In this document: piece after piece, positions 10,917 to 26,902 of the stretch
Position numbering within the stretch: position 1 is the stretch's first letter
How the letters are laid out: every line of letters starts with the position of its first letter
DNA from: Octopus sinensis
Taxonomy: Eukaryota
DNA length: 28,704 nucleotides
NCBI RefSeq assembly: GCF_006345805.1
Contig: NW_021833511.1
Span: forward strand, 1-28,704
Direction: 5' to 3'
Notes under the pieces: generated by a model
The model's database searches: none
Seen by the model: the letters and a program-made list of their open reading frames with translations, nothing else
What the model was told of the DNA's origin: nothing
Made by a program: the position numbers and the translations under genes

Positions 10917-11100
10917 GGGGAGAGTTCACGAAAAAGACAAAAGACGAAGATAGGTAGTGTAGAAAATAAACAGATGTATTAGTATAGCGCTCAGGAATTG
11001 AAAAAATCTTATGTTTCGAGCCTACGCTCTTCTGTAGAAAGGGACACAGAAAAAAAACGAGAAGAGAAACAAGGAGAGAAAAAATGTGTGTAGTAGCTAT
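10917..11100 (-). mobile_element. Solo Penelope-like pLTR fragment with degenerate minimal hammerhead motif
   Basis: Homologous to 28010-28173. Minus strand CTTT-CTACAGA-A-GAGC-GTAG-GCTC-GAAA-CAT at 11008-11043. Confidence 0.55.
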
Positions 11101-11544
11101 CGATCTATAATGGCGACTCCAGTTGATCCTGTCACCTCTTATCACACACGAACTTCTCCAATGGACTTTCTACTTATCTACCCTTTACGGATTCTCCTTT
11201 GGACATTTACCCTCCGGCTGCACCTCTCCTACCTATAGATCACTGTGGACTCTTTATGAAAAATCCTTACAGTTGTTTAATCTCGGATATGTAAGAAATA
11301 TTGCAAGTCCGAGAAAATAAAAATGAGTTAACAATTAACTATAGGCGCATGAGCGGCTGGGTGGTAAGTATAGGCGTAGAAGTGGCTTTGTGGTAAGTAG
11401 CTTGCTTACCAGCCACATGGTTCCGGGTTCAGTCCCACTGCGTGGAATCTTGGGCAAGTGTCTTCTGCTATAGCTTCAGGCCAACCAAATCGTTGTGAGT
11501 GGATTTCGTAGACGGAAACTCAAAGCTCGTCGTATATATGTATA

Positions 11545-12112
11545 TGCACTCGGTACGATCCGTTTATTTTTGGTAGTAATGACTTTGAAAGTCCCTCCTA
11601 GCGTGTGGCATTTATGTGTAATAATGCCCTCTATATAATATAAATAAATATTTTCAAGTGAAAAAATTTCAGATTTTTTCTCTTATGAGGTTTTTCATGC
11701 TAACTACTGATAATTTGTGTAAGATTTCTTATTAAGATTTTATCCCTTAATTGTTAAATTTATTCCGATGAAACACGCTTCTTCCCGAAATGCAGTTCGA
11801 AAAAGCCCGCCATTTACATAAATATATGATGAAGGAACATTTCCATGTGCTACGATGGACTCGACGGTTCTCTGTTTGGTTCCGCCAGGTATGTCGGGTT
11901 TGTTTATTTTTGATATGTTTTGAATATGTTTCACTGATGAACAAAAGACGTAGATAATACGTTAATTGCGAAATCACAGGTGATCTGGAACTAAATTCTG
12001 TTTTTAAATGTCTTGCTTCGAGAGCTGCACTCGGCGCGATCCGTTTATTTTTGGTAGTAATGACTTTGAAAGTCCCTCCTAGCGTGTGGCATCTATGTGT
12101 AATAATGCCCTC

Positions 12113-12123
<11 letters not shown>
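11545..12123 (+). mobile_element. Retrozyme-like non-coding element: 481-nt unit + 98-bp terminal redundancy
   Basis: Direct repeats 11545-11642 and 12026-12123 (3 mismatches in 98), internal hammerhead fold, no credible ORF, inserted in (TA)n. Confidence 0.65.
11922..11998 (+). ncRNA. Type I hammerhead ribozyme fold
   Basis: Core CUGAUGA 11934-11940 and GAAA 11970-11973. Stem III AUCA/UGAU, AUC cleavage triplet (cut after C11985). Stem I GUUUCA/UGGAAC plus GAAU/AUUC beyond an internal loop. Stem II CAA/UUG plus ACGUA/UACGU. The conserved G10.1 is A here. Confidence 0.75.
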
Positions 12124-12181
<58 letters not shown>

Positions 12182-12779
12182 TGAGTCTGTGTTTGTCCCC
12201 CCTAGCATTGCTCGACAACCGATGCTGGTGTGGTTACATCCCCGTAACTTAGCGGTTCGGCAAAAGAGACCGTTAGAATAAGTACTGGGCTTACGAATAA
12301 TATGTCTTGGGGTCGATTTGCTCGACTAAAGGCGGTGCTCCAGCATGGCCGCAGTCAAATGAAAATGACTGAAACAAGTAAAAGAATAAAAGAGAATATA
12401 CTAAAAGACATGTCGCATTTCAGGTTTAAGAATTAAATATGATAAATGCGTTAACGAATTCATAAAACAAGCTATTTGTCATGTAAAAGAACAGAATCCC
12501 AGACGACTAGTAATATTCTGTGAAGGCTAAAAGGAATCTTTGTATGAATTTGCTGACCGTTTGCATGTATAATCGACTGCACAGCTGCAACGCTTTCCCG
12601 TATCTGTCCGCGTTTATGTAAGATATTTGTATAGTTCGTTCACTTTTATAGCTTACATGAAAACAACATATAATGGGTATCGAATAAGGTATATTTTACT
12701 TTGCATTGTGTTTGAAATCTTCCAACAATACACACGCGCTTATGAGTTACACGCACACCAACGCACATTAACACATGTA

Positions 12780-12808
<29 letters not shown>

Positions 12809-12811
<3 letters not shown>

Positions 12812-13218
12812 GGCGCAGGAGTGGCTGTGTGGTAAGTAGCTTGCTAACCAACCACATGGTTCCGGGTTCAGTCCCACTGCGTGGCATCTTGGGCGAGTGT
12901 CTTCTGCTACAGCCCCGGGCTGACCAATGCCTTGTGAGTGGATGTGGTAGACGGAAACTGAAAGAAGCCCGTCGTATATATGTATATATATATATATGTG
13001 TGTGTGTGTATGTGTTTGTCCTCCTAGCATTGCTTGACAACCAATGCTGGTGTGCTTACGTCCCCGTCACTTAGCGGTTCGGCAAAAGAGACCGATAGAA
13101 TAAGTACTGGGCTTACAAAGAATAAGTCCCGGGGTCGATTTGCTCGACTAAAGGCGGTGCTCCAGCATGGCCGCAGTCAAATGACTGAAACAAGTATAAG
13201 AGTAAAAGAGTAAAAGAG
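12809..13218 (+). mobile_element. tRNA-derived SINE family B, full length
   Basis: Complete head, internal (TA)n(TG)n, (TAAAAGAG)n tail. Confidence 0.92.
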
Positions 13219-15164: not shown

Positions 15165-15384
15165 ATGTATATGTATGTGTGTATGTGTTTGCCCCCCCCC
15201 AACATCGCTTGACAACCGATGCTGGTGTGTTTACGTCCCCGTAACTTAGGGCTTCGGCAAGAGAGACCGATAGAATAAGTACTAGGTTTACAAAGAATAA
15301 GTCCTGGGTTCGATTTGCTCGACTACAGGTGGTGCTCCAGCATGGCCGCAGTTAAATGACTGAAACATAAAAAAAGGAAATAAA

Positions 15385-15387
<3 letters not shown>
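15001..15387 (+). mobile_element. Family B SINE lacking the first part of the head
   Basis: Starts GGTTCCGGGTT after (TA)n; internal (TA)n; normal 3' half. Confidence 0.88.
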
Positions 15388-15432
<45 letters not shown>

Positions 15433-15836
15433 ATATATTCTAGTGTATTGGGAGTCTCTTAAGTGCTTTTCCTAGTTCCGGAGTATCAGTCTGTTGTTTT
15501 CGCATGTTGTATTCCACTATTAATGAACATTAATTGATACTACCTTTCAAATAGTGTTTGTCTTTAATTATTTATGTCGTAGACGCTACGAAAGTTGCAT
15601 AAAATCACGTGTCTTAAAATAACTAATCAACATTATGCATCCACTAATTAAAAATTACCATCATGGGTATTGTCTTCAAGCTGGGTTTTTTTTTTAATAT
15701 AGAGCGTGAATGTAAGATAGTATTAGTAATATTTGTGTTCGAAAATCGACCCGTGAAGTTAATATAACTATTTTTTTTTAAATTCTGCATATCCATTTTC
15801 AACTCTATTTCTTTATGTATCTTGTGTGGAGAAAAG

Positions 15837-15871
<35 letters not shown>

Positions 15872-15940
15872 ATATATATATATACAATCCACATACTACA
15901 ACCATTTTTTAGACGCAAACCAGAGAAACAGAGATGTGAA

Positions 15941-18221
15941 ATGGAAACAAATAAACAAGTCCAACCGAAAATAATCAACCTGTCAAAGAAAATCCTGAGT
16001 TCTATACAAATCAAAATCCTAGCAAGAGGTTTAAAATTTATCCCTACCCCCCGCAGATCGAACCCAAATGAAATTAAGGACAATACTTTGGACTTCTGCC
16101 GAAAATTACGCCTCACAGAAGCTCTTTACAACTACACCACTGAAGATGACTCAATAGTGAAAGACAAAAGTGAGTACCATCCTACAACAGGTAGAAATAA
16201 AGGACTTGATGTTTTCTGTGATCACATAACTTGTTTTCTTTACAATACAATTCCAAAACAACATATAAAATCCAACCTTAATTTAAATGAATGGAAAGAC
16301 CTTGTCGAGCTAAAAAATGACATAAACCTCACTATTAAAGAAGCCGACAAAGGAAGTGCGGTAGTATTGATGGATACAGAGTACTACAAAAATTTGATAC
16401 TTCCATGTTGGAAAATAATACTTACTATGAAAAACTAACATATTACAACCCACAGAAAACACTGAATAACTTATCCTCCTTACTCCAAATTCATGGAAAG
16501 GGTCTTACAACACATGAAATTGACTATCTATCCAATTTCAAATACAGTCCTAGTCTATTCTACGGATTACCCAAGATACATAAAAATCCACTCATTTGTG
16601 AAGCCTGCAAAGTCTCTACAAACCTATCCATTAATGTCCCTCCACCTACTGACCTCAAACTCAGACCCATCATAGCTGGCCCTTGCGAAACCCACCATTT
16701 GAGTAACTTCCTTGACATATTACACAAACCTCTTGTAAAAATATGTGAAAAGCTATATCGGGGATGACCTAGACATGCTGAACCACTTCCCGAAGACAGT
16801 AAAGGACGGAACTCTACTGGTATCTTTCGATGTGGCGAATCTATACACTAATATCCCACATGACTATGTTATAGAGGCAATCACATTTTGGCTAGAAAAA
16901 TACCCAGAAGAGATCCCAGGACGAATTAACCACAATTTTATAATTGAAGCACTGAAATTCGTCCTGTTCAACAATCATTTCTTGTTCGATACTACTTACT
17001 ATCGACAGAAATGCGGAATTGCAATGGGGACCAGAGCTGCTCCAGTGATTGCAAACCTCGTAATGGGTTACCACGAACTTAAGTTATATTAATCATCACT
17101 AGAAAAATATGGCGCCTCTTTCAATTACTACTTAAAGGAGAACTGGAAGAGATATTTAGATGATTGCTTCATACTTTGGCAAGATAGCATGGATCAACTC
17201 CTTGATTTCAAAAGAATGCTCAACAACATACACAGCAATATACAATTTACTATGGAACACAACAGTAAGCAACTACCTTTTCTAGACATCTTAATTAGAA
17301 TAGTTAACAACCACATAGAAACAGACATCTTTTATAAACCCACAGATTATAAACAATACCTATTATTTAACTCCTGCCACCCCCAAACACATAAAAATCA
17401 ACATACCCTTTAACCTAGCAAAAAGAATCTGCACCATAGTTTCCGATACATACACTCGTGAACATAGACTCCTTGAACTTAGATCTACACTAACTAAAAG
17501 ACACTATCCAATCTCATTAGTACATGAAGGCATCAAAAGAGCTAAGGAAATAGATATACAAAGATTAAGGAAAACTAGCAGAAATACTAAACAAGAGTTA
17601 AAGATACTCCCGTACATCACACATAACCCCAGAAACAACGAAGCCTTCAACATCATCACCCAAAACCTTCCCATCCTCACAGCAGACAAAACAATGAACG
17701 AAATATAAAATTATAAAAAGCAAAAAGCAACTAAAGTCACTGAAAGAATATTAACCAGCGCTAGACTTTACCCACTAACTACTGAGCCAAAAGTGACAAA
17801 ATGTGGACGGTCTAACTGTGGAACATGCCCCCACCTTCTGGAGGGTTCAGAATTCCAATCCAAACAAAGAGAAATATTTAAGATCAAATCAAATTTCACC
17901 TGCGCCTCAGCAAATGTAATCTATGTCATGACATGCATAGGATGTAGTAAACTCTATATTGGACAAACAGGAATTTCTCTCCGTCAAAGAATCACCATTC
18001 ACAAAGAGCAAATCCGTCACACACAATACAGACAGTTAAAGGTGAGTGAACACATAGAAAGATGTGCCAGGAATCTTAATCCCAATTTCCAAATATTTCC
18101 CTTTTACCAATGCTCACAGAACACCACAATGCAACAAAGGTTGAATAAAGAGGCATTTTTCATCAACAAATTTCTCCCCCAACTAAATATGAACACAGAA
18201 CTCAATACAGAACACCACTAA
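15941..18221 (+). pseudogene. PLE RT / GIY-YIG endonuclease polyprotein, disrupted
   Basis: Motifs IINLS..RGLKFIPTP, ADKGSAVV, FYGLPKIHK, LRPII, SFDV.NLYTNIPH, Q..GIAMG..AP.ANL, RYLDD (YLDD 17153-17164), LPFLD, YKPT, CHP, CGRSNCGTC, VIY-x10-YIG (17916-17963). Frameshifts near 16402, 16741 and 17384, stop at 17090, lesion near 17705-17750. Confidence 0.92.
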
Positions 18222-18279
18222 CTCTTCAATTGAAACCACTAAACCCTATACACTACCTACATCACTCACATCTCTAATT

Positions 18280-18369
18280 CCAGAACTACTTACATCCCTT
18301 ACAAATAGTCCAGAACTACTTACCTCCCTTACAAATAGTCCATAACTACTTACCTCCCTTACAAATAAT
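18280..18369 (+). repeat. 3 x 30-bp tandem repeat in the PLE 3' region
   Basis: CCAGAACTACTTACMTCCCTTACAAATAGT at 18280, 18310 and 18340. Confidence 0.95.
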
Positions 18370-18665
18370 CTTTTGTTCAAACGATGAATAGCTTTCGCGT
18401 AAACTATTGGTTCGTTTTGTTCTCTTACTTTATTATCATCTTAGAAACATCTCATATTAATGACCTTTATGACTTGTATTACTACCTCAGTCAATCTAAA
18501 TGTATATATTTGTCACTACCTGTCATAAACAGCCATTTTCTATTTGCGATATGCATTTTCGTTGATTTTTCATATTTTACCCTTACATTTCCACGTGTAT
18601 TTTATATTTTCTTTTCGTAACATATTTCTACTATATATATATATATATATTATATATATAGATAT

Positions 18666-18972
18666 ATCACGTGACCACGTGACCGACCAGACCATCAGAT
18701 GTTGTTACACATCGCTGGTCACAATGCGTTCGCATTGTTTTAGCCTTCGAATGACGCCACCCCGCTGGCTAAGCGAGCAGGCCAACAGAAGAAAAAGTGG
18801 GAGAAAGAGTGGTGAAAGAGTACAGCAGGGATCACCACCCCCTGCCGGAGCCTCGTGGAGCTTTTAGGTGTTTTCGCTCAATAAACACTCACAACGCCCG
18901 GTCTAGGAATCGAAACCGCGATCCTGCGACCGCGAGTCCGCTGCCCTAACCACTGGGCCATTGCGCCTCCAC
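18666..18972 (-). mobile_element. tRNA-derived SINE family C with tail C2
   Basis: Head GTGGAGGCGCAATGGCCCAGTGGTTAGGG...GGTTTCGATTCC; tail ends GGTCACGTGGTCACGTGAT then (AT)n. Confidence 0.88.
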
Positions 18973-20978: not shown

Positions 20979-21099
20979 TGTAACTAGGCACAACGAAATC
21001 ATTCGAGAAGTGACTGGGAAAGCGACACATAACGTATTTCACGAATACAAACATTGAGAAGCCGCAATAACTGCGAAATACATATCTGTCTTTCTCATG

Positions 21100-21595: not shown

Positions 21596-21984
21596 GTATT
21601 TAGGTAGCTTTAACTCTTTGCACCCAGTTTGACTTAATGTAGCGAATTCACCATGATAATGAAAACAGTACCGGAAAAAGAGTTGGGGTTTGTGACCTAT
21701 AAAAACACTATTGAAACTGGTGCCCTACACAAATATGGCAGCAGTTTACTGACAGAACTTAGCAAGCGAGAAAGAGAAATAGAGTGTGTATAGATGGCGT
21801 GGTGGTGCTAAAGGCCGGATAGGATGTACGTCCTTTCATTTTTGTAGGGAAATGGCATAGTTATGTTTATGTATTTATATCAAAAGAAACTTCAATCTGA
21901 GAGTGGCTCTTGAAGTGAACTTGTGTTATCTTATATTTCAGTATATTTAGCATAACACTACTTTCTATGACAATATTTCTTACT

Positions 21985-22312
21985 CACCTCTCTCTCTCTC
22001 CCTCTCTCTCCCTTGCTCTCTCTCTCCCTCTCCCTTGCTCTCTCTCCCTTGATCTCTTTCTCCCTCTCCCTTGCTCTCTCTCTTTCTCCCTCTCCCTTGC
22101 TCTCTCTCTTTCTCCCTCTCCCTTGCTCTCTCTCCCTCTCCCCTGCTCTCTCTCCCTTGCTCTCTTTCACTCTCCCTCTCCCTTACTCTCTCTCCCTTCC
22201 TCTCTCTCTCCATCTCTCTTGCTCTTTCTATCCCTCTCCCTTCCTCTCTTGCTCTCTCTCGCTCTCCCTTGCTCTCGCTCTCCCTCTCTCTTGCTCTCCC
22301 CCTCTCTCTCAG
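21985..22312. repeat. (CT)n-derived polypyrimidine minisatellite with recurring CTCTCCCTTGCTCT units
   Basis: Directly visible. Confidence 0.95.
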
Positions 22313-22422
22313 TGTGACCTATTCTTCATGCACATATACACGGCCTGTGATATGCACATATGCACACACACATATGCACACATAAATATGCACACATGCA
22401 CACACACACACGCACATACATC

Positions 22423-24225: not shown

Positions 24226-24383
24226 GTGAGACAAGTAACATAGATTTCCGCGTAGTTTCTCTTTAAAAATTTTAATACTAGGAATCATTAAATCGTTATG
24301 TTAATAAATTTCTTAGTAAGAAAATAATTACACGACTTATGGGTTTTATATGGACCTGTCATTTATGTGCACGTAAGTACGTG

Positions 24384-24397
24384 TGTATGTATGTATG

Positions 24398-24428
<31 letters not shown>

Positions 24429-24620
24429 TGCATGTATGTATGTATGTATGTATGTATTAGCATGTATGTATGTTGTATGTATGTATGTATGATGTATGTA
24501 TGTATGTATGCATGTATGTATGTATGTATGTAGGTATGTATGTATGTATGCATGCATGTATGTATGTATGTATGTATGTATGTATGTCGTATGTATGTAT
24601 GTATGCATGCTGCATGTATG

Positions 24621-24651
<31 letters not shown>

Positions 24652-24937
24652 TGTATGTATGTATGTATGTATGCATGTATGTAGTATGTATGTATGTATG
24701 ATGTATGTATGTATGTATGTATGTATGCATGTATGTATGTATGTATGTATGTATGTATGTTATGTATGTATGTATGCATGCATGTATGTATGTATGTATG
24801 CATGCATGTATGTATGTATGTATGCCTGTATGTATGTATGTATGTATGCATGTATGTATGTATGTATGTATGTATGCATGTATGTATGTATGTATGTATG
24901 TATGTATGTATGTATGTATGTATGTATGCATGCATGC

Positions 24938-24969
<32 letters not shown>

Positions 24970-26695
24970 GTATGTTAATGCATGTATGTATGTATGTATG
25001 TATGTATGCATGTATGTATGTATGTATGTATGCATGTATGTATGTATGTATGTATGTATGTATGTATGTATGGATGTATGTTATGCATGTATGTATGTAT
25101 GTATGTATGTATGCGTATGTATGTATGTATGAATGTATGTATGTATGTATGTATGTATGTATGTATGTATGTATGTATGTATGTATGCATGTATGTATGT
25201 ATGTATGTATGTATGTATGTATGTATGCATGCATGTATTATGTATGTATGCATGCATGTATGTATGTATGTATGTATGTATGTATGTATGTATGTATGTA
25301 TGTATGCATGTATGTATGTATGTATGTATGCATGTATGTATGTATGTATGTATGTATGTATGTATGCATGTATGTATGTATGTATGTATGTATGTATGTA
25401 TGTATGCATGTATGTATGTATGTATGTATGCATGTATGTATGTATGTTGTAGGTATGCATGCATGTATGTATGTAGTATGTATGTATGTATGTGTATGCA
25501 TGCATGTATGTATGTTGTATGTATGCATGTATGTATGTATGTATGTATGCATGTATGTATGTATGTATGTATGTTATGATGTATGTATGTATGTATGCAT
25601 GTATGTATGTCTGTATGTATGCATGTATGTATGTATGTATGTATGTATGTATGTATGCATGTATGTTGTATGTATGTATGTATGTATGTATGTATGCACT
25701 GTATGTATGTATGTATGTATTTGTATGTATGTATGCATGTATGTATGTATGTATGTATGTATGTATGTATGCATGTATGCATGTATGTATGTATGTATGT
25801 ATGTATGTATGCATGTATGTATGTATGTATGTATGTATGTATGTATGCTGTATGTATGTATGTATGTAGGTATGGATGTATGTATGTATGTATGTATCTA
25901 TGTATGCATGTATGTATGTATGTATGTATGCATGTATGTATGTATGTATGTATGTATGTATGCATGTATGTATGTATGTATGTATGCATGTATTATGTAT
26001 GTATGTATGTATGTATGCATGTATGTATGTGTATGTATGTATGTATGTATGTATGTATGCATGTATGTATGTATGTGTATGTATGTATGTATGTATGCAT
26101 GTATGTATTATGTATGTATGATGTATGTATGTATGTATGTATGTATGTATGTATGCATGTATGTATGTATGTATGTATGCATGTATGTATGTATGTATGT
26201 ATGTATGTATGCATGTGTATGTTGTATGTATATGTATGTATAAATGTATGTATGTATGTATGTATGCCTGTATGTATGTATGTTGTATGTATGTATGTAT
26301 GCTGTATGTATGTATGTATGTATGTATGTATGCATGTATGTATGTATGGGTATGTATGCATGTATGTAGTATGCATGTATGTATGTATGCATGTATGTAT
26401 GTATGTATGTATGTATGTATGTATGTATGCATGCATGTATGTATGTATGTATGTATGTATGTATGTATGCATGTATGTATGTATGTATGTATGTATGTAT
26501 GTATGCATGTATGTATGTATGTATGTATGTATGTATGTATGTATGCATGTATGTATGTATGTATGTATGTATGTATGTATGCATGTATGTATGTATGTAT
26601 GTATGTATGTATGTATGTATGTATGTATGCATGTATGTATGTATGTGTATGTATGTATGTATGTATGTATGCATGCATGTATGTATGTATGTATG
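24384..26695. repeat. About 2.3-kb (TATG)n array with CATG variants
   Basis: Directly visible; source of all the YVCM/HTYI pseudo-ORFs. Confidence 0.98.
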
Positions 26696-26839
26696 GCTGG
26701 CTTTGCATTGCCCCAATATAATGACAGTATATATATATGTGTGTGTGTGTATGTTTGTGTGGATAAATTAAGAAATGGAGTGAAAAGCAGGTGTTATTTA
26801 AATCAATTATACTTCCAGCATGTTTATATCTATATCTAT

Positions 26840-26852
26840 CTATCTATTTATG

Positions 26853-26902
<50 letters not shown>

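What the first reader, a model, noticed from the sequence alone, without database searches (positions are those of the whole stretch)
11545..12123. Retrozyme-like insertion: about 1.2 turns of a 481-nt hammerhead-bearing unit, landed in the (TA)n tract of a SINE
Seen: a 579-bp non-coding segment splits a family B SINE at its internal microsatellite. Its first and last 98 bp are direct repeats (period 481, 3 mismatches), and a full hammerhead fold lies inside, not at an end. Established: hammerhead-carrying non-autonomous retroelements (retrozymes) in animals form small circular RNAs and are thought to borrow Penelope-like RTs. Inference: the layout is what would result from an RT primed by target (TA)n on the TA-rich stretch TATATAATATA of a circular or multimeric RNA, copying one full turn plus 98 nt. 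The predicted monomer is 11986-12123 joined to 11643-11985 (481 nt). A full-size ribozyme with an extended stem I, rather than the minimal PLE form, makes this distinctive. I cannot tell whether it is already catalogued.
Basis: partly seen in the sequence, partly recalled or inferred. Interest (0 to 1): 0.85.

Follow-up and report, generated by a model that had tools for sequence, protein, structure and literature searches.

The report
Hammerhead-bearing retroelement copy inside a SINE
A 579-bp non-coding insert that covers about 1.2 turns of a 481-bp unit and carries a hammerhead-like ribozyme motif sits in a SINE's (TA)n tract; it looks like an ordinary animal retrozyme or Penelope-dependent insertion, but its copy number and ribozyme activity could not be checked.

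Summary
Bases 11545-12123 interrupt a tRNA-derived SINE exactly at its (TA)n/(TG)n microsatellite. The first and last 98 bp are direct repeats 481 bp apart, with 3 transition mismatches. One hammerhead-like motif lies inside, with predicted cleavage after C11985.

The motif has every conserved core base and three drawable helices. A loose descriptor finds such a motif about 1e-7 times per base in random sequence. It is atypical, with an A·C mismatch at the base of a long helix II. No Rfam hammerhead model detects it, and a model built from four validated retrozyme ribozymes gives E=3.

The layout fits what is already published for animal non-LTR retrozymes and Penelope-like elements (PLEs): partial head-to-tail copies, (TA)n targets and low GC. 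A decayed PLE with a CX4CxxC + GIY-YIG endonuclease, itself flanked by (TA)n, lies 3.7 kb away.

The "extended stem I, full-size ribozyme" is normal for retrozymes, not distinctive. The circle-templated cDNA model is also already in the literature.

No other copy could be reached because the source genome is not in any searchable collection. Multi-copy status, ribozyme conservation and circular RNA therefore remain untested.

Verdict: probably a new member of a known kind. Interest is moderate to low.

The parts
11368..11544 (+). Left half of the host SINE (tRNA-related head up to the start of its (TA)n tract)
   Evidence: Aligns with intact copies at 12805-13204 (+) and 8118-8506 (-) up to ...CGTCGTATATATGTATAT (inverted-repeat pair I12).
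11545..11642 (+). Upstream partial copy of the unit (98 bp, pLTR-like). It corresponds to the last 98 nt of the full unit and lacks the hammerhead.
   Evidence: 95-97% identical to 12026-12123 at spacing 481, with 3 transitions.
11643..12025 (+). Unique 383-bp part of the unit. It starts AATAAATATTTTC directly after the TA-rich stretch.
   Evidence: No similarity elsewhere in the window. No protein homologues.
11922..11998 (+). Hammerhead-like type I motif. Helix I is 11928-11933/11986-11991 plus extension 11922-11925/11995-11998. Core is CUGAUGA 11934-11940. Helix II is 11941-11969 (A11941·C11969 mismatch, 3 bp, AA/AA internal loop, 6 bp, loop GAUAA). GAA is 11970-11972. Helix III is 11973-11976/11981-11984 with loop CAGG. 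Predicted cleavage is between C11985 and U11986.
   Evidence: helix II pair probability 0.9-1.0. Not detected by Rfam. Scores 7.9 bits, E=3, with a model built from validated retrozyme ribozymes.
12026..12123 (+). 3'-terminal 98 bp of the full unit, the second copy of the repeat
11632..11642 (+). Templated TA-rich stretch TATATAATATA at the internal unit junction
   Evidence: Identical to 12113-12123, including the irregular AA step, so it belongs to the element and not to the target microsatellite.
12113..12123 (+). The same TATATAATATA at the 3' end of the insert, merging into the target (TA)n. This is the presumed priming microhomology.
12124..12395 (+). Remaining (TA)n(TG)n tract and right half of the host SINE
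   Evidence: Aligns with the right halves of the intact SINE copies (D17 and I9).
15885..18630 (+). Decayed Penelope-like element. [quoted passage not shown] It is a candidate type of autonomous partner but is not related in sequence to the unit.
   Evidence: ORFs. Pfam RVT_1 E=1.3e-4 (22.2 bits, below the 29.6-bit curated cut-off) and GIY-YIG E=3.8e-7. Frame with stops. Flanks. No pLTR, no Rfam hammerhead, no similarity to the unit.

Best explanation
This is a dead, retrotransposed copy of a small non-coding, hammerhead-bearing, non-autonomous retroelement: an animal non-LTR retrozyme in the broad sense, mobilised by a Penelope-like element.

Proposed steps:
1. A PLE-type GIY-YIG endonuclease nicked the (TA)n tract of the SINE (inferred).
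2. The freed (TA)n 3' end annealed to the AUAUA of the template's UAUAUAAUAUA stretch. The microhomology is shown; the priming is inferred.
3. The reverse transcriptase copied the plus-strand RNA through one whole 481-nt unit and 98 nt further, then stopped. The 5' end was joined with 1 nt of microhomology (the layout is shown).

Neither end of the insert coincides with the predicted ribozyme cleavage site (C11985|U11986). The template was therefore not a ribozyme-cut linear monomer. It was either a circular monomer or an uncleaved multimeric transcript.

The locus has only one ribozyme, so it cannot release a unit-length RNA itself.

The two 98-bp repeats have since diverged by 3 transitions (3%), so the insertion is not recent.
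For: - The insert splits a SINE at its (TA)n.
- It covers about 1.2 units with period 481.
- The TA-rich stretch is templated and present at both junctions.
- The hammerhead core is complete (CUGAUGA / GAAAU / AUC, which fits the published filter CUGANGA/GAAAY/RUH). Three helices can be drawn.
- Chance is about 1e-4 for the element.
- Helix I (6 bp, 'CA'-CUGAUGA, cleavage followed by UGG) matches all four validated retrozyme ribozymes.
- GC is 35%, and there is no coding capacity.
- A PLE with a CX4CxxC-GIY-YIG endonuclease, flanked by (TA)n, is in the same window.
- Literature: PLE partial tandems, (TA)n targets and indiscernible TSDs (PMC8557442). Retrozyme units of 51-972 bp, frequent monomers, and kinship with PLE pLTRs. 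A mismatch at the base of helix II in an axolotl retrozyme ribozyme.
Against: - No Rfam hammerhead model matches at E<=10, even on 88 nt.
- A covariance model built from four validated retrozyme ribozymes gives 7.9 bits, E=3, rank 5 in the window.
- The ribozyme is atypical. It has A·C at 10.1/11.1, and helix II spans 29 nt instead of about 13. An alternative pairing of CACUGAUGA with UCACAGGUGA outcompetes helix III in thermodynamic predictions. Validated ribozymes fail that thermodynamic test too.
- The predicted 481-nt circle is not unusually self-paired (z = -0.77), unlike described retrozyme circles.
- Only one copy is seen, with no tandem array. No other copy is retrievable.
- The unit shows no similarity to the neighbouring PLE.
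Confidence: 0.55

Rival explanations
1. This is a standard PLE-type partial tandem made of two nested 5'-truncated 3' ends of a longer element (an autonomous PLE or a longer non-autonomous derivative). A 98-bp 3' end is followed by a 481-bp 3' end. On this reading 481 is an accidental truncation length and not the circumference of a circle. The hammerhead is simply the 3'-proximal ribozyme of that element.
For: PLE insertions are highly 5'-truncated and commonly preceded by a more truncated copy that forms a pLTR. Their ribozymes lie near the 3' end, and (TA)n is a preferred target (PMC8557442). The motif lies 138 nt from the 3' end. Its large helix II recalls PLE ribozymes. A PLE is present in the window.
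Against: There is no PLE coding remnant in the 481 bp. Helix I of 6 bp and a stable 4-bp helix III are unlike the minimal metazoan PLE ribozymes. The pLTR here lacks the ribozyme. There is no similarity to the PLE in the window. None of these points is decisive.
Confidence: 0.2
2. The hammerhead resemblance is fortuitous or long dead. The insert is some other non-coding repeat, such as a satellite monomer reinserted via extrachromosomal circular DNA, an unclassified non-autonomous transposon, or an insertion followed by a local partial duplication.
For: No covariance model recognises the motif. The bare core pattern occurs in 34% of shuffled windows. A genome of gigabase size would hold hundreds of chance matches to the loose descriptor (extrapolated). 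The A·C mismatch sits at a pair that is normally G-C. The circle is not strongly structured.
Against: The motif co-occurs with an independently odd layout (1.2 units, (TA)n target) that is typical of ribozyme-bearing retroelements. Chance of the full motif in this element is about 1e-4. All core bases are intact, and helix I matches validated ribozymes.
Confidence: 0.17
3. It is a miniature LTR retrotransposon (TRIM/SMART type) or a plant-style LTR retrozyme with 98-bp LTRs.
For: Terminal direct repeats flank an internal region. The repeat starts with TG.
Against: Read from the sequence: the repeat ends in TA, not CA. AATAAATATTTTCAAGTG after the 5' repeat is not a tRNA-complementary primer binding site. 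TGTCTTGCTTCGAGAGC before the 3' repeat is not a polypurine tract. The ribozyme is not inside the repeats. It is type I, not type III. No TSD is discernible.
Confidence: 0.02
4. It is a non-autonomous Helitron or Helentron, inserted by rolling-circle DNA transposition into an AT dinucleotide with read-through that gave a partial tandem.
For: Helitrons insert at A|T sites, so (TA)n tracts are natural targets, and rolling-circle read-through can make tandems (established knowledge, not tested here). A GGCAT...ATGCC hairpin lies 16 nt from the 3' end.
Against: There is no 5' TC and no 3' CTRR terminus (the ends read TGCAC... and ...TATAATATA). No Helitron protein is in the window.
Confidence: 0.03
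5. It is an endogenised cDNA of an infectious viroid-like or satellite-like circular RNA, not a genome-born retrozyme.
For: The unit size (481 nt) and a single-polarity hammerhead fit viroid-like satellite RNAs. More than unit length was copied.
Against: GC is 35% and self-pairing is weak, which is unlike rod-like viroid-like RNAs. No ribozyme of any Rfam family is found on the minus strand. PLE-type target and layout are present.
Confidence: 0.03

Closest known systems
Metazoan non-LTR retrozymes (Cervera & de la Peña 2020, PMC7229834; Li, Clavereau & Pollet 2026, bioRxiv 10.64898/2026.07.22.740005)
   Same: Small non-coding unit with one type I hammerhead per unit. Low GC. No LTR, PBS or PPT. 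Head-to-tail arrangement. Coexistence with PLEs. The unit length is inside the reported 51-972 bp range. Monomer-like dispersed copies are reported as common. The proposed mechanism (circular RNA copied into more-than-unit-length cDNA and integrated by an autonomous element) is the published model.
   Different: Only 1.2 units are present, not a multi-copy tandem. Helix II is about 10 bp over 29 nt instead of 4 bp, with an A·C mismatch at its base. Helix III is 4 bp with a non-palindromic loop instead of 1-2 bp with a palindromic loop. The predicted circle is not notably self-paired. Expression, circularity and copy number are unknown. No cephalopod or other relative could be compared.
Penelope-like elements and their non-autonomous derivatives (Neptune, Nematis, Naiad and Hydra clades; Craig et al. 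2021, PMC8557442; Cervera & de la Peña 2014, PMC4209133)
   Same: Partial tandem insertion giving a pLTR-like terminal repeat. Insertion into (TA)n with no discernible TSD. A hammerhead towards the 3' end. A larger-than-usual helix II.
   Different: No RT/EN ORF. The pLTR-like repeat does not contain the ribozyme. The ribozyme is not the minimal dimer-dependent form. No 30-40 bp 'tail' or inverted 5'-truncated partner was recognised.
Mytilus galloprovincialis retrozyme Mg353 (experimentally validated mollusc retrozyme, sequence in the supplement of PMC7229834)
   Same: Mollusc-type AT-rich unit of a few hundred bp. Ribozyme context ...UCA-CUGAUGA...C|UGG.... A 6-bp helix I with a U·G at the third pair, followed by an internal loop and a second stem.
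   Different: No sequence homology beyond the ribozyme core. The Mytilus helix II is 4 bp with a 5-nt loop, and its helix III is a GC-rich palindrome. The Mytilus units occur in thousands of tandem copies and are proven circular RNAs.

Membership tests
Metazoan non-LTR retrozyme | Type I hammerhead with conserved catalytic centre CUGANGA / GAAAY / RUH and three helices | tested here: met
   CUGAUGA 11934-11940, GAAAU 11970-11974, AUC 11983-11985. Helices I, II and III can be drawn. This is a sequence-level test only. Helix II has an A·C at its base, so the 'perfect helix topology' filter used in PMC7229834 would reject it.
Metazoan non-LTR retrozyme | Recognition by hammerhead covariance models | tested here: not met
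   No Rfam hammerhead hit at the gathering score or at E<=10 on 1.1 kb or 88 nt. Model R1, built from 4 validated retrozyme ribozymes, gives 7.9 bits, E=3.
Metazoan non-LTR retrozyme | Short tandem repeats (150-450 bp; 51-972 bp in the 2026 survey) present in multiple copies | tested here: inconclusive
   There are 1.2 units of 481 bp. No second copy is in the 28.7-kb window. The source genome is not in any searchable collection.
Metazoan non-LTR retrozyme | Low GC (<50%), and no LTR/PBS/PPT | tested here: met
   GC is 34.7-35.2%. No PBS-like or polypurine sequence lies next to the repeats (read).
Metazoan non-LTR retrozyme | Unit RNA predicted to be a stable, highly self-paired circle | tested here: not met
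   The circular fold is -98.9 kcal/mol against -94.4 ± 5.9 for 200 dinucleotide shuffles, z = -0.77.
Metazoan non-LTR retrozyme | Self-cleavage and accumulation as circular RNA | not testable with these tools
   This needs in vitro transcription, northern blots, RNase R treatment or RNA-seq of the source organism.
Metazoan non-LTR retrozyme | Coexistence with autonomous PLEs in the same genome | tested here: met
   A decayed PLE lies at ~15885-18630. Only a degraded copy was seen; an intact PLE was not.
Penelope-like element (autonomous) or solo pLTR | RT + GIY-YIG ORF adjoining the repeat, or sequence identity to a PLE terminus | tested here: not met
   No PLE-like coding in the unit. No similarity to the only PLE available. 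Comparison with the genome's other PLEs was not possible.
Penelope-like element (mobilisation signature) | Partial head-to-tail insertion, and (TA)n target without a clear TSD | tested here: met
   against the description in PMC8557442.
Metazoan PLE minimal hammerhead | Helix III absent or 1 bp with a palindromic loop, helix I 4-5 bp, helix II 7-8 bp | tested here: not met
   Helix III is 4 bp plus CAGG and helix I is 6 bp. Only the large helix II agrees.
TRIM or LTR retrozyme | TG...CA LTRs, PBS, PPT, 4-5 bp TSD, and a (type III) ribozyme inside the LTRs | tested here: not met
   Read: the repeat ends in TA, there is no PBS or PPT, and the ribozyme lies outside the repeats.
Helitron | 5' TC, and 3' hairpin + CTRR, inserted at A|T | tested here: not met
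   The termini are TGCAC... and ...TATAATATA.

The most novel reading that the evidence does not exclude
The unit is the first described retrozyme family of its host lineage. The SINEs look cephalopod-like from my memory only, and no paper in the library links retrozymes or hammerheads with cephalopods. On this reading it carries a monomer-active hammerhead of unusual build: a long interrupted helix II and a stable helix III. This 1.2-turn single insertion, with a templated TA stretch fused to a (TA)n target, would be a fossil showing that PLE machinery primes on an internal site of a circular or uncleaved multimeric ribozyme RNA by microhomology. That would be direct structural evidence for a step of retrozyme mobilisation that has so far only been proposed.
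Probability: 0.3. Interest if true: 0.5.

Novelty: new member of a known kind. Interest (0 to 1): 0.35.

Why it matters
If the family is real and multi-copy, it would extend hammerhead retrozymes to another animal lineage. It would also add a ribozyme variant that current covariance models miss, which means genome scans based on Rfam would undercount such elements.

Single insertions longer than one unit, with microhomology to a (TA)n target, are useful natural records of how PLE reverse transcriptases pick up circular or multimeric RNA templates. That mechanism has never been reconstituted.

If the unit is single-copy, or the motif is not conserved, this is just one more decayed repeat inside a SINE.

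Tried and rejected
1. Rfam at the gathering score on the whole window, and at E<=10 on 1.1 kb and on 88 nt, gave no hammerhead or other ribozyme on either strand.

2. A covariance model built from four experimentally validated retrozyme hammerheads was not significant for the candidate. A better-scoring hit at 21050-21092 lacks the CUGANGA core and was dismissed.

3. Thermodynamic folding:
- The hammerhead fold is not the minimum-energy fold (-11.1 against -16.5 kcal/mol).
- The validated ribozymes also fail this test, so I judged it uninformative.

4. Searches for other copies all found nothing:
- BLAST within the window.
- Protein-space search with the 124-aa frame.
- Exact-ORF look-ups.
- DNA patterns in metagenome, prokaryote-genome and viral collections.
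- These negatives say nothing about copy number. The source genome is evidently not in the collections, since the PLE endonuclease ORF finds only <=49% identical relatives.

5. Contigs carrying PLE endonuclease relatives (L001, L002) have no Rfam hit and no similarity to the unit. This line was dropped.

6. The LTR/TRIM, Helitron and viroid-like readings were rejected on terminal and compositional features.

7. The 185-bp tandem family at 2059-2695 was checked as a possible second retrozyme. It is a SINE-derived array without any hammerhead core.

Full report
**1. The observation**

Reading 11100-12600 and the repeat finder show a direct repeat at 11545-11651 and 12026-12132 with start-to-start spacing 481. 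A base-by-base comparison puts the true repeat at 98 bp, 11545-11642 and 12026-12123. It has three mismatches: 11554 T/C, 11555 A/G and 11612 T/C. All are transitions, and two sit at one CpG. Beyond 11642 and 12123 the two copies diverge: AATAAATATTTTC on one side, (TA)n on the other.

Aligning the flanks with two intact copies of the same SINE in the window (12805-13204 on +, 8118-8506 on -) shows where the insert landed. 11368-11544 is the SINE's left half, 12124-~12395 is its right half, and the break lies in the SINE's own (TA)n(TG)n tract. No target-site duplication can be read in a microsatellite.

The insert is non-coding. It holds only short ORFs. The longest frame has no relative among 5.8 billion proteins, and there is no PLE-like coding. 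The descriptive part of the finding is therefore correct.

**2. The hammerhead**

The window has a single CUGAUGA...GAAA, at 11934-11973. The bare pattern is not rare: 34 of 100 shuffles have one. Around it the full type I layout can be drawn:
- Helix I: 6 bp, 11928-11933 with 11986-11991 (A-U, C-G, U·G, U-A, U-A, G-C). After an AU/UAA internal loop comes a further GAAU/AUUC stem.
- Helix II: 11941-11969. It has an A·C mismatch at the 10.1/11.1 position, then 3 bp, an AA/AA internal loop, 6 bp and the loop GAUAA.
- Junction: G12-A13-A14.
- Helix III: AUCA/UGAU closed by CAGG.
- Cleavage site: C17 = C11985.

Every conserved core base is present. The motif meets the CUGANGA/GAAAY/RUH filter used by the discoverers of animal retrozymes.

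A three-helix descriptor, loosened so that it accepts the candidate, hit only this site in the window. It hit 0 times in 20 Mb of random sequence with the window's dinucleotide statistics and twice in 20 Mb with the element's statistics. That is about 1e-4 for the two strands of the element. It would also mean hundreds of chance hits in a gigabase genome.

Several results count against the motif:
- No Rfam hammerhead model reports it at the gathering score, or at E<=10 when only 1.1 kb or 88 nt are searched.
- I took the four validated retrozyme ribozymes (coral, mussel, two axolotl) from the supplement of PMC7229834, aligned them and built a covariance model. The candidate scored 7.9 bits, E=3, fifth in the window. 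Helices II and III were skipped as local ends.
- The hammerhead fold (-11.1 kcal/mol) is not the minimum-energy fold (-16.5). CACUGAUGA can pair with UCACAGGUGA.

The last point carries no weight, because the minimal domains of the validated ribozymes are mispredicted in the same way.

Against published descriptions the motif is a mixture. Helix I is canonical: 6 bp, the same CA-CUGAUGA...C|UGG context as all four validated ribozymes, and an extension like the mussel one. Helix II is much longer than the canonical 4 bp, and PLE ribozymes also have large helices II. Helix III is more stable than the usual 1-2 bp with a palindromic loop, which predicts activity as a monomer. A mismatch at the base of helix II has a precedent in an axolotl retrozyme ribozyme.

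I conclude that the motif is probably a real hammerhead, or a slightly decayed one, of an unusual build. This single sequence cannot prove it.

**3. Surroundings**

ORF listing revealed a decayed Penelope-like element on the + strand at about 15885-18630. The evidence:
- Reverse-transcriptase pieces: Pfam RVT_1 E=1.3e-4, which is 22.2 bits and below the 29.6-bit curated cut-off, and YLDD in a frame with stops.
- A GIY-YIG endonuclease, PF01541 E=3.8e-7.
- The endonuclease is preceded by CGRSNCGTC, which is the CX2-5CxxC linker. PMC8557442 associates this linker with Neptune, Nematis and Naiad elements and with (TA)n targeting.

The element is bounded by (TA)n on both sides, at 15871-15884 and 18631-18665. 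It has no pLTR here, no Rfam hammerhead and no similarity to the 481-bp unit.

It therefore shows that (TA)n-targeting PLE machinery has been active in this genome. It does not identify the partner of the unit.

**4. Mechanism**

Published knowledge that bears on the layout:
- PLE insertions are 5'-truncated and often form partial head-to-tail tandems (pLTRs).
- They prefer microsatellites, (TA)n in several clades, so TSDs cannot be discerned.
- Non-autonomous derivatives behave the same way.
- Animal retrozymes are thought to be copied from circular RNAs into oligomeric cDNA and integrated by autonomous elements (legend of Suppl. Fig. S9).
- Animal retrozymes are phylogenetically tied to PLE pLTRs, have units of 51-972 bp, and often occur as monomers.

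The insert fits this picture. Its 3' end is the element's own TATATAATATA, identical at the internal junction and therefore templated, fused to the target (TA)n. The cDNA ran through one full unit plus 98 nt, and the 5' junction shares one T.

Neither end coincides with C11985|U11986. If the ribozyme is functional, the template was therefore a circle or an uncleaved multimer, not a cut monomer. That is an inference.

With only one ribozyme the locus cannot itself yield unit-length RNA. The 3% divergence between the repeats, made only of transitions, indicates some age.

**5. Rivals**

The main rival is that this is two nested 5'-truncated 3' ends of a longer PLE-type element, so that 481 bp is a truncation length and not a unit. 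One copy cannot exclude this. The ribozyme's build and the absence of coding sequence argue mildly against it.

A chance motif in an unrelated repeat remains possible, given the failures of the covariance models.

The LTR/TRIM, Helitron and endogenised viroid-like readings fail on termini, PBS/PPT, composition (35% GC) and weak self-pairing (z = -0.77).

**6. What could not be done**

No other copy of the unit could be retrieved. There is nothing in the window or in protein space, and nothing in the metagenome, prokaryotic or viral DNA collections.

The PLE endonuclease finds only <=49% identical relatives from ENA assemblies. The source genome is therefore simply absent from the collections, and these negatives are uninformative.

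**7. Comparison and novelty**

The closest known things are metazoan non-LTR retrozymes and PLE-dependent non-autonomous elements. The element works like them, and it meets the sequence-level criteria: core, low GC, no LTR features, PLE-type insertion signature, and PLE coexistence. It fails or leaves open the others: recognition by covariance models, a self-paired circle, tandem multiplicity and expression.

The validated mussel ribozyme shows it too.

The library holds no report of retrozymes or hammerheads in cephalopods. The assignment of the window to a cephalopod rests only on my recollection of the SINE sequences and was not verified (one search found nothing).

At best this is a new member of a known kind with an unusual ribozyme variant. 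I score interest at 0.35.

Noticed in passing
window 15885-18630 (+), ORFs 15815-16438, 16405-16767, 16745-17092, 17793-18221: Decayed Penelope-like element with frameshifts and stops. [quoted passage not shown] No pLTR and no detectable hammerhead in this copy. A 3x 30-bp tandem sits in its 3' UTR at 18279-18368.
   Followed up: partly
window 2059-2695, 3923-4291, 5059-5395 (-), 10250-10368: A second tRNA-derived SINE family whose ~185-bp 3' part occurs as head-to-tail tandem units (period 184-185, up to 3.5 units), also in inverted orientation. It has no hammerhead core. How a SINE comes to form such arrays is unexplained.
   Followed up: partly
window 18700-18972 and 7345-7454 (inverted pair, 93%): A third tRNA-related SINE-like repeat. 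At 18972 its end abuts a (CA)n(TA)n tract. The ORF at 7082-7423 (-) overlaps the other copy.
   Followed up: no
window 15378-15440 to 15836-15884: About 395 bp of unassigned sequence (15441-15835) lies between a SINE's terminal (TA)n and the (CT)n(TA)n that precedes the PLE. It could be another insertion into (TA)n or the 5' part of the PLE unit. The (TA)n here also contains TATATAATATAT.
   Followed up: no
window 24300-26900; 1-550; 8930-9180; 9470-9560; 5724-5810; 6026-6130; 21950-22340: Very long microsatellite and minisatellite arrays: (ATGT/ATGC)n of ~2.6 kb, (GATA)n with a ~150-bp higher-order period, (ATA)n-(ATG)n-(GTG)n gradients, (CAG)n/(TAG)n, and a CT-rich 12-14-bp repeat. They produce long spurious ORFs of up to 577 aa.
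   Followed up: no
window 21050-21092 (+): Best hit (13 bits, E=0.09) of the covariance model made from validated retrozyme hammerheads. Its core reads UUGAGAA instead of CUGANGA, so it is not a hammerhead.
   Followed up: yes
window 11336-11393: The 5' end of the host SINE is preceded by a 29-bp imperfect duplicate of the SINE's first bases (TAACTATAGGCGCATGAGCGGCTGGGTGG / TAAGTATAGGCGTAGAAGTGGCTTTGTGG, 76%).
   Followed up: no
window 11632-11648: The unit junction reads CTATATAATATAAATAAAT. It contains a TATA-box-like TATATAA and an AATAAA hexamer. Whether either is used (promoter in the pLTR-like repeat, or a polyadenylation signal) is unknown.
   Followed up: no
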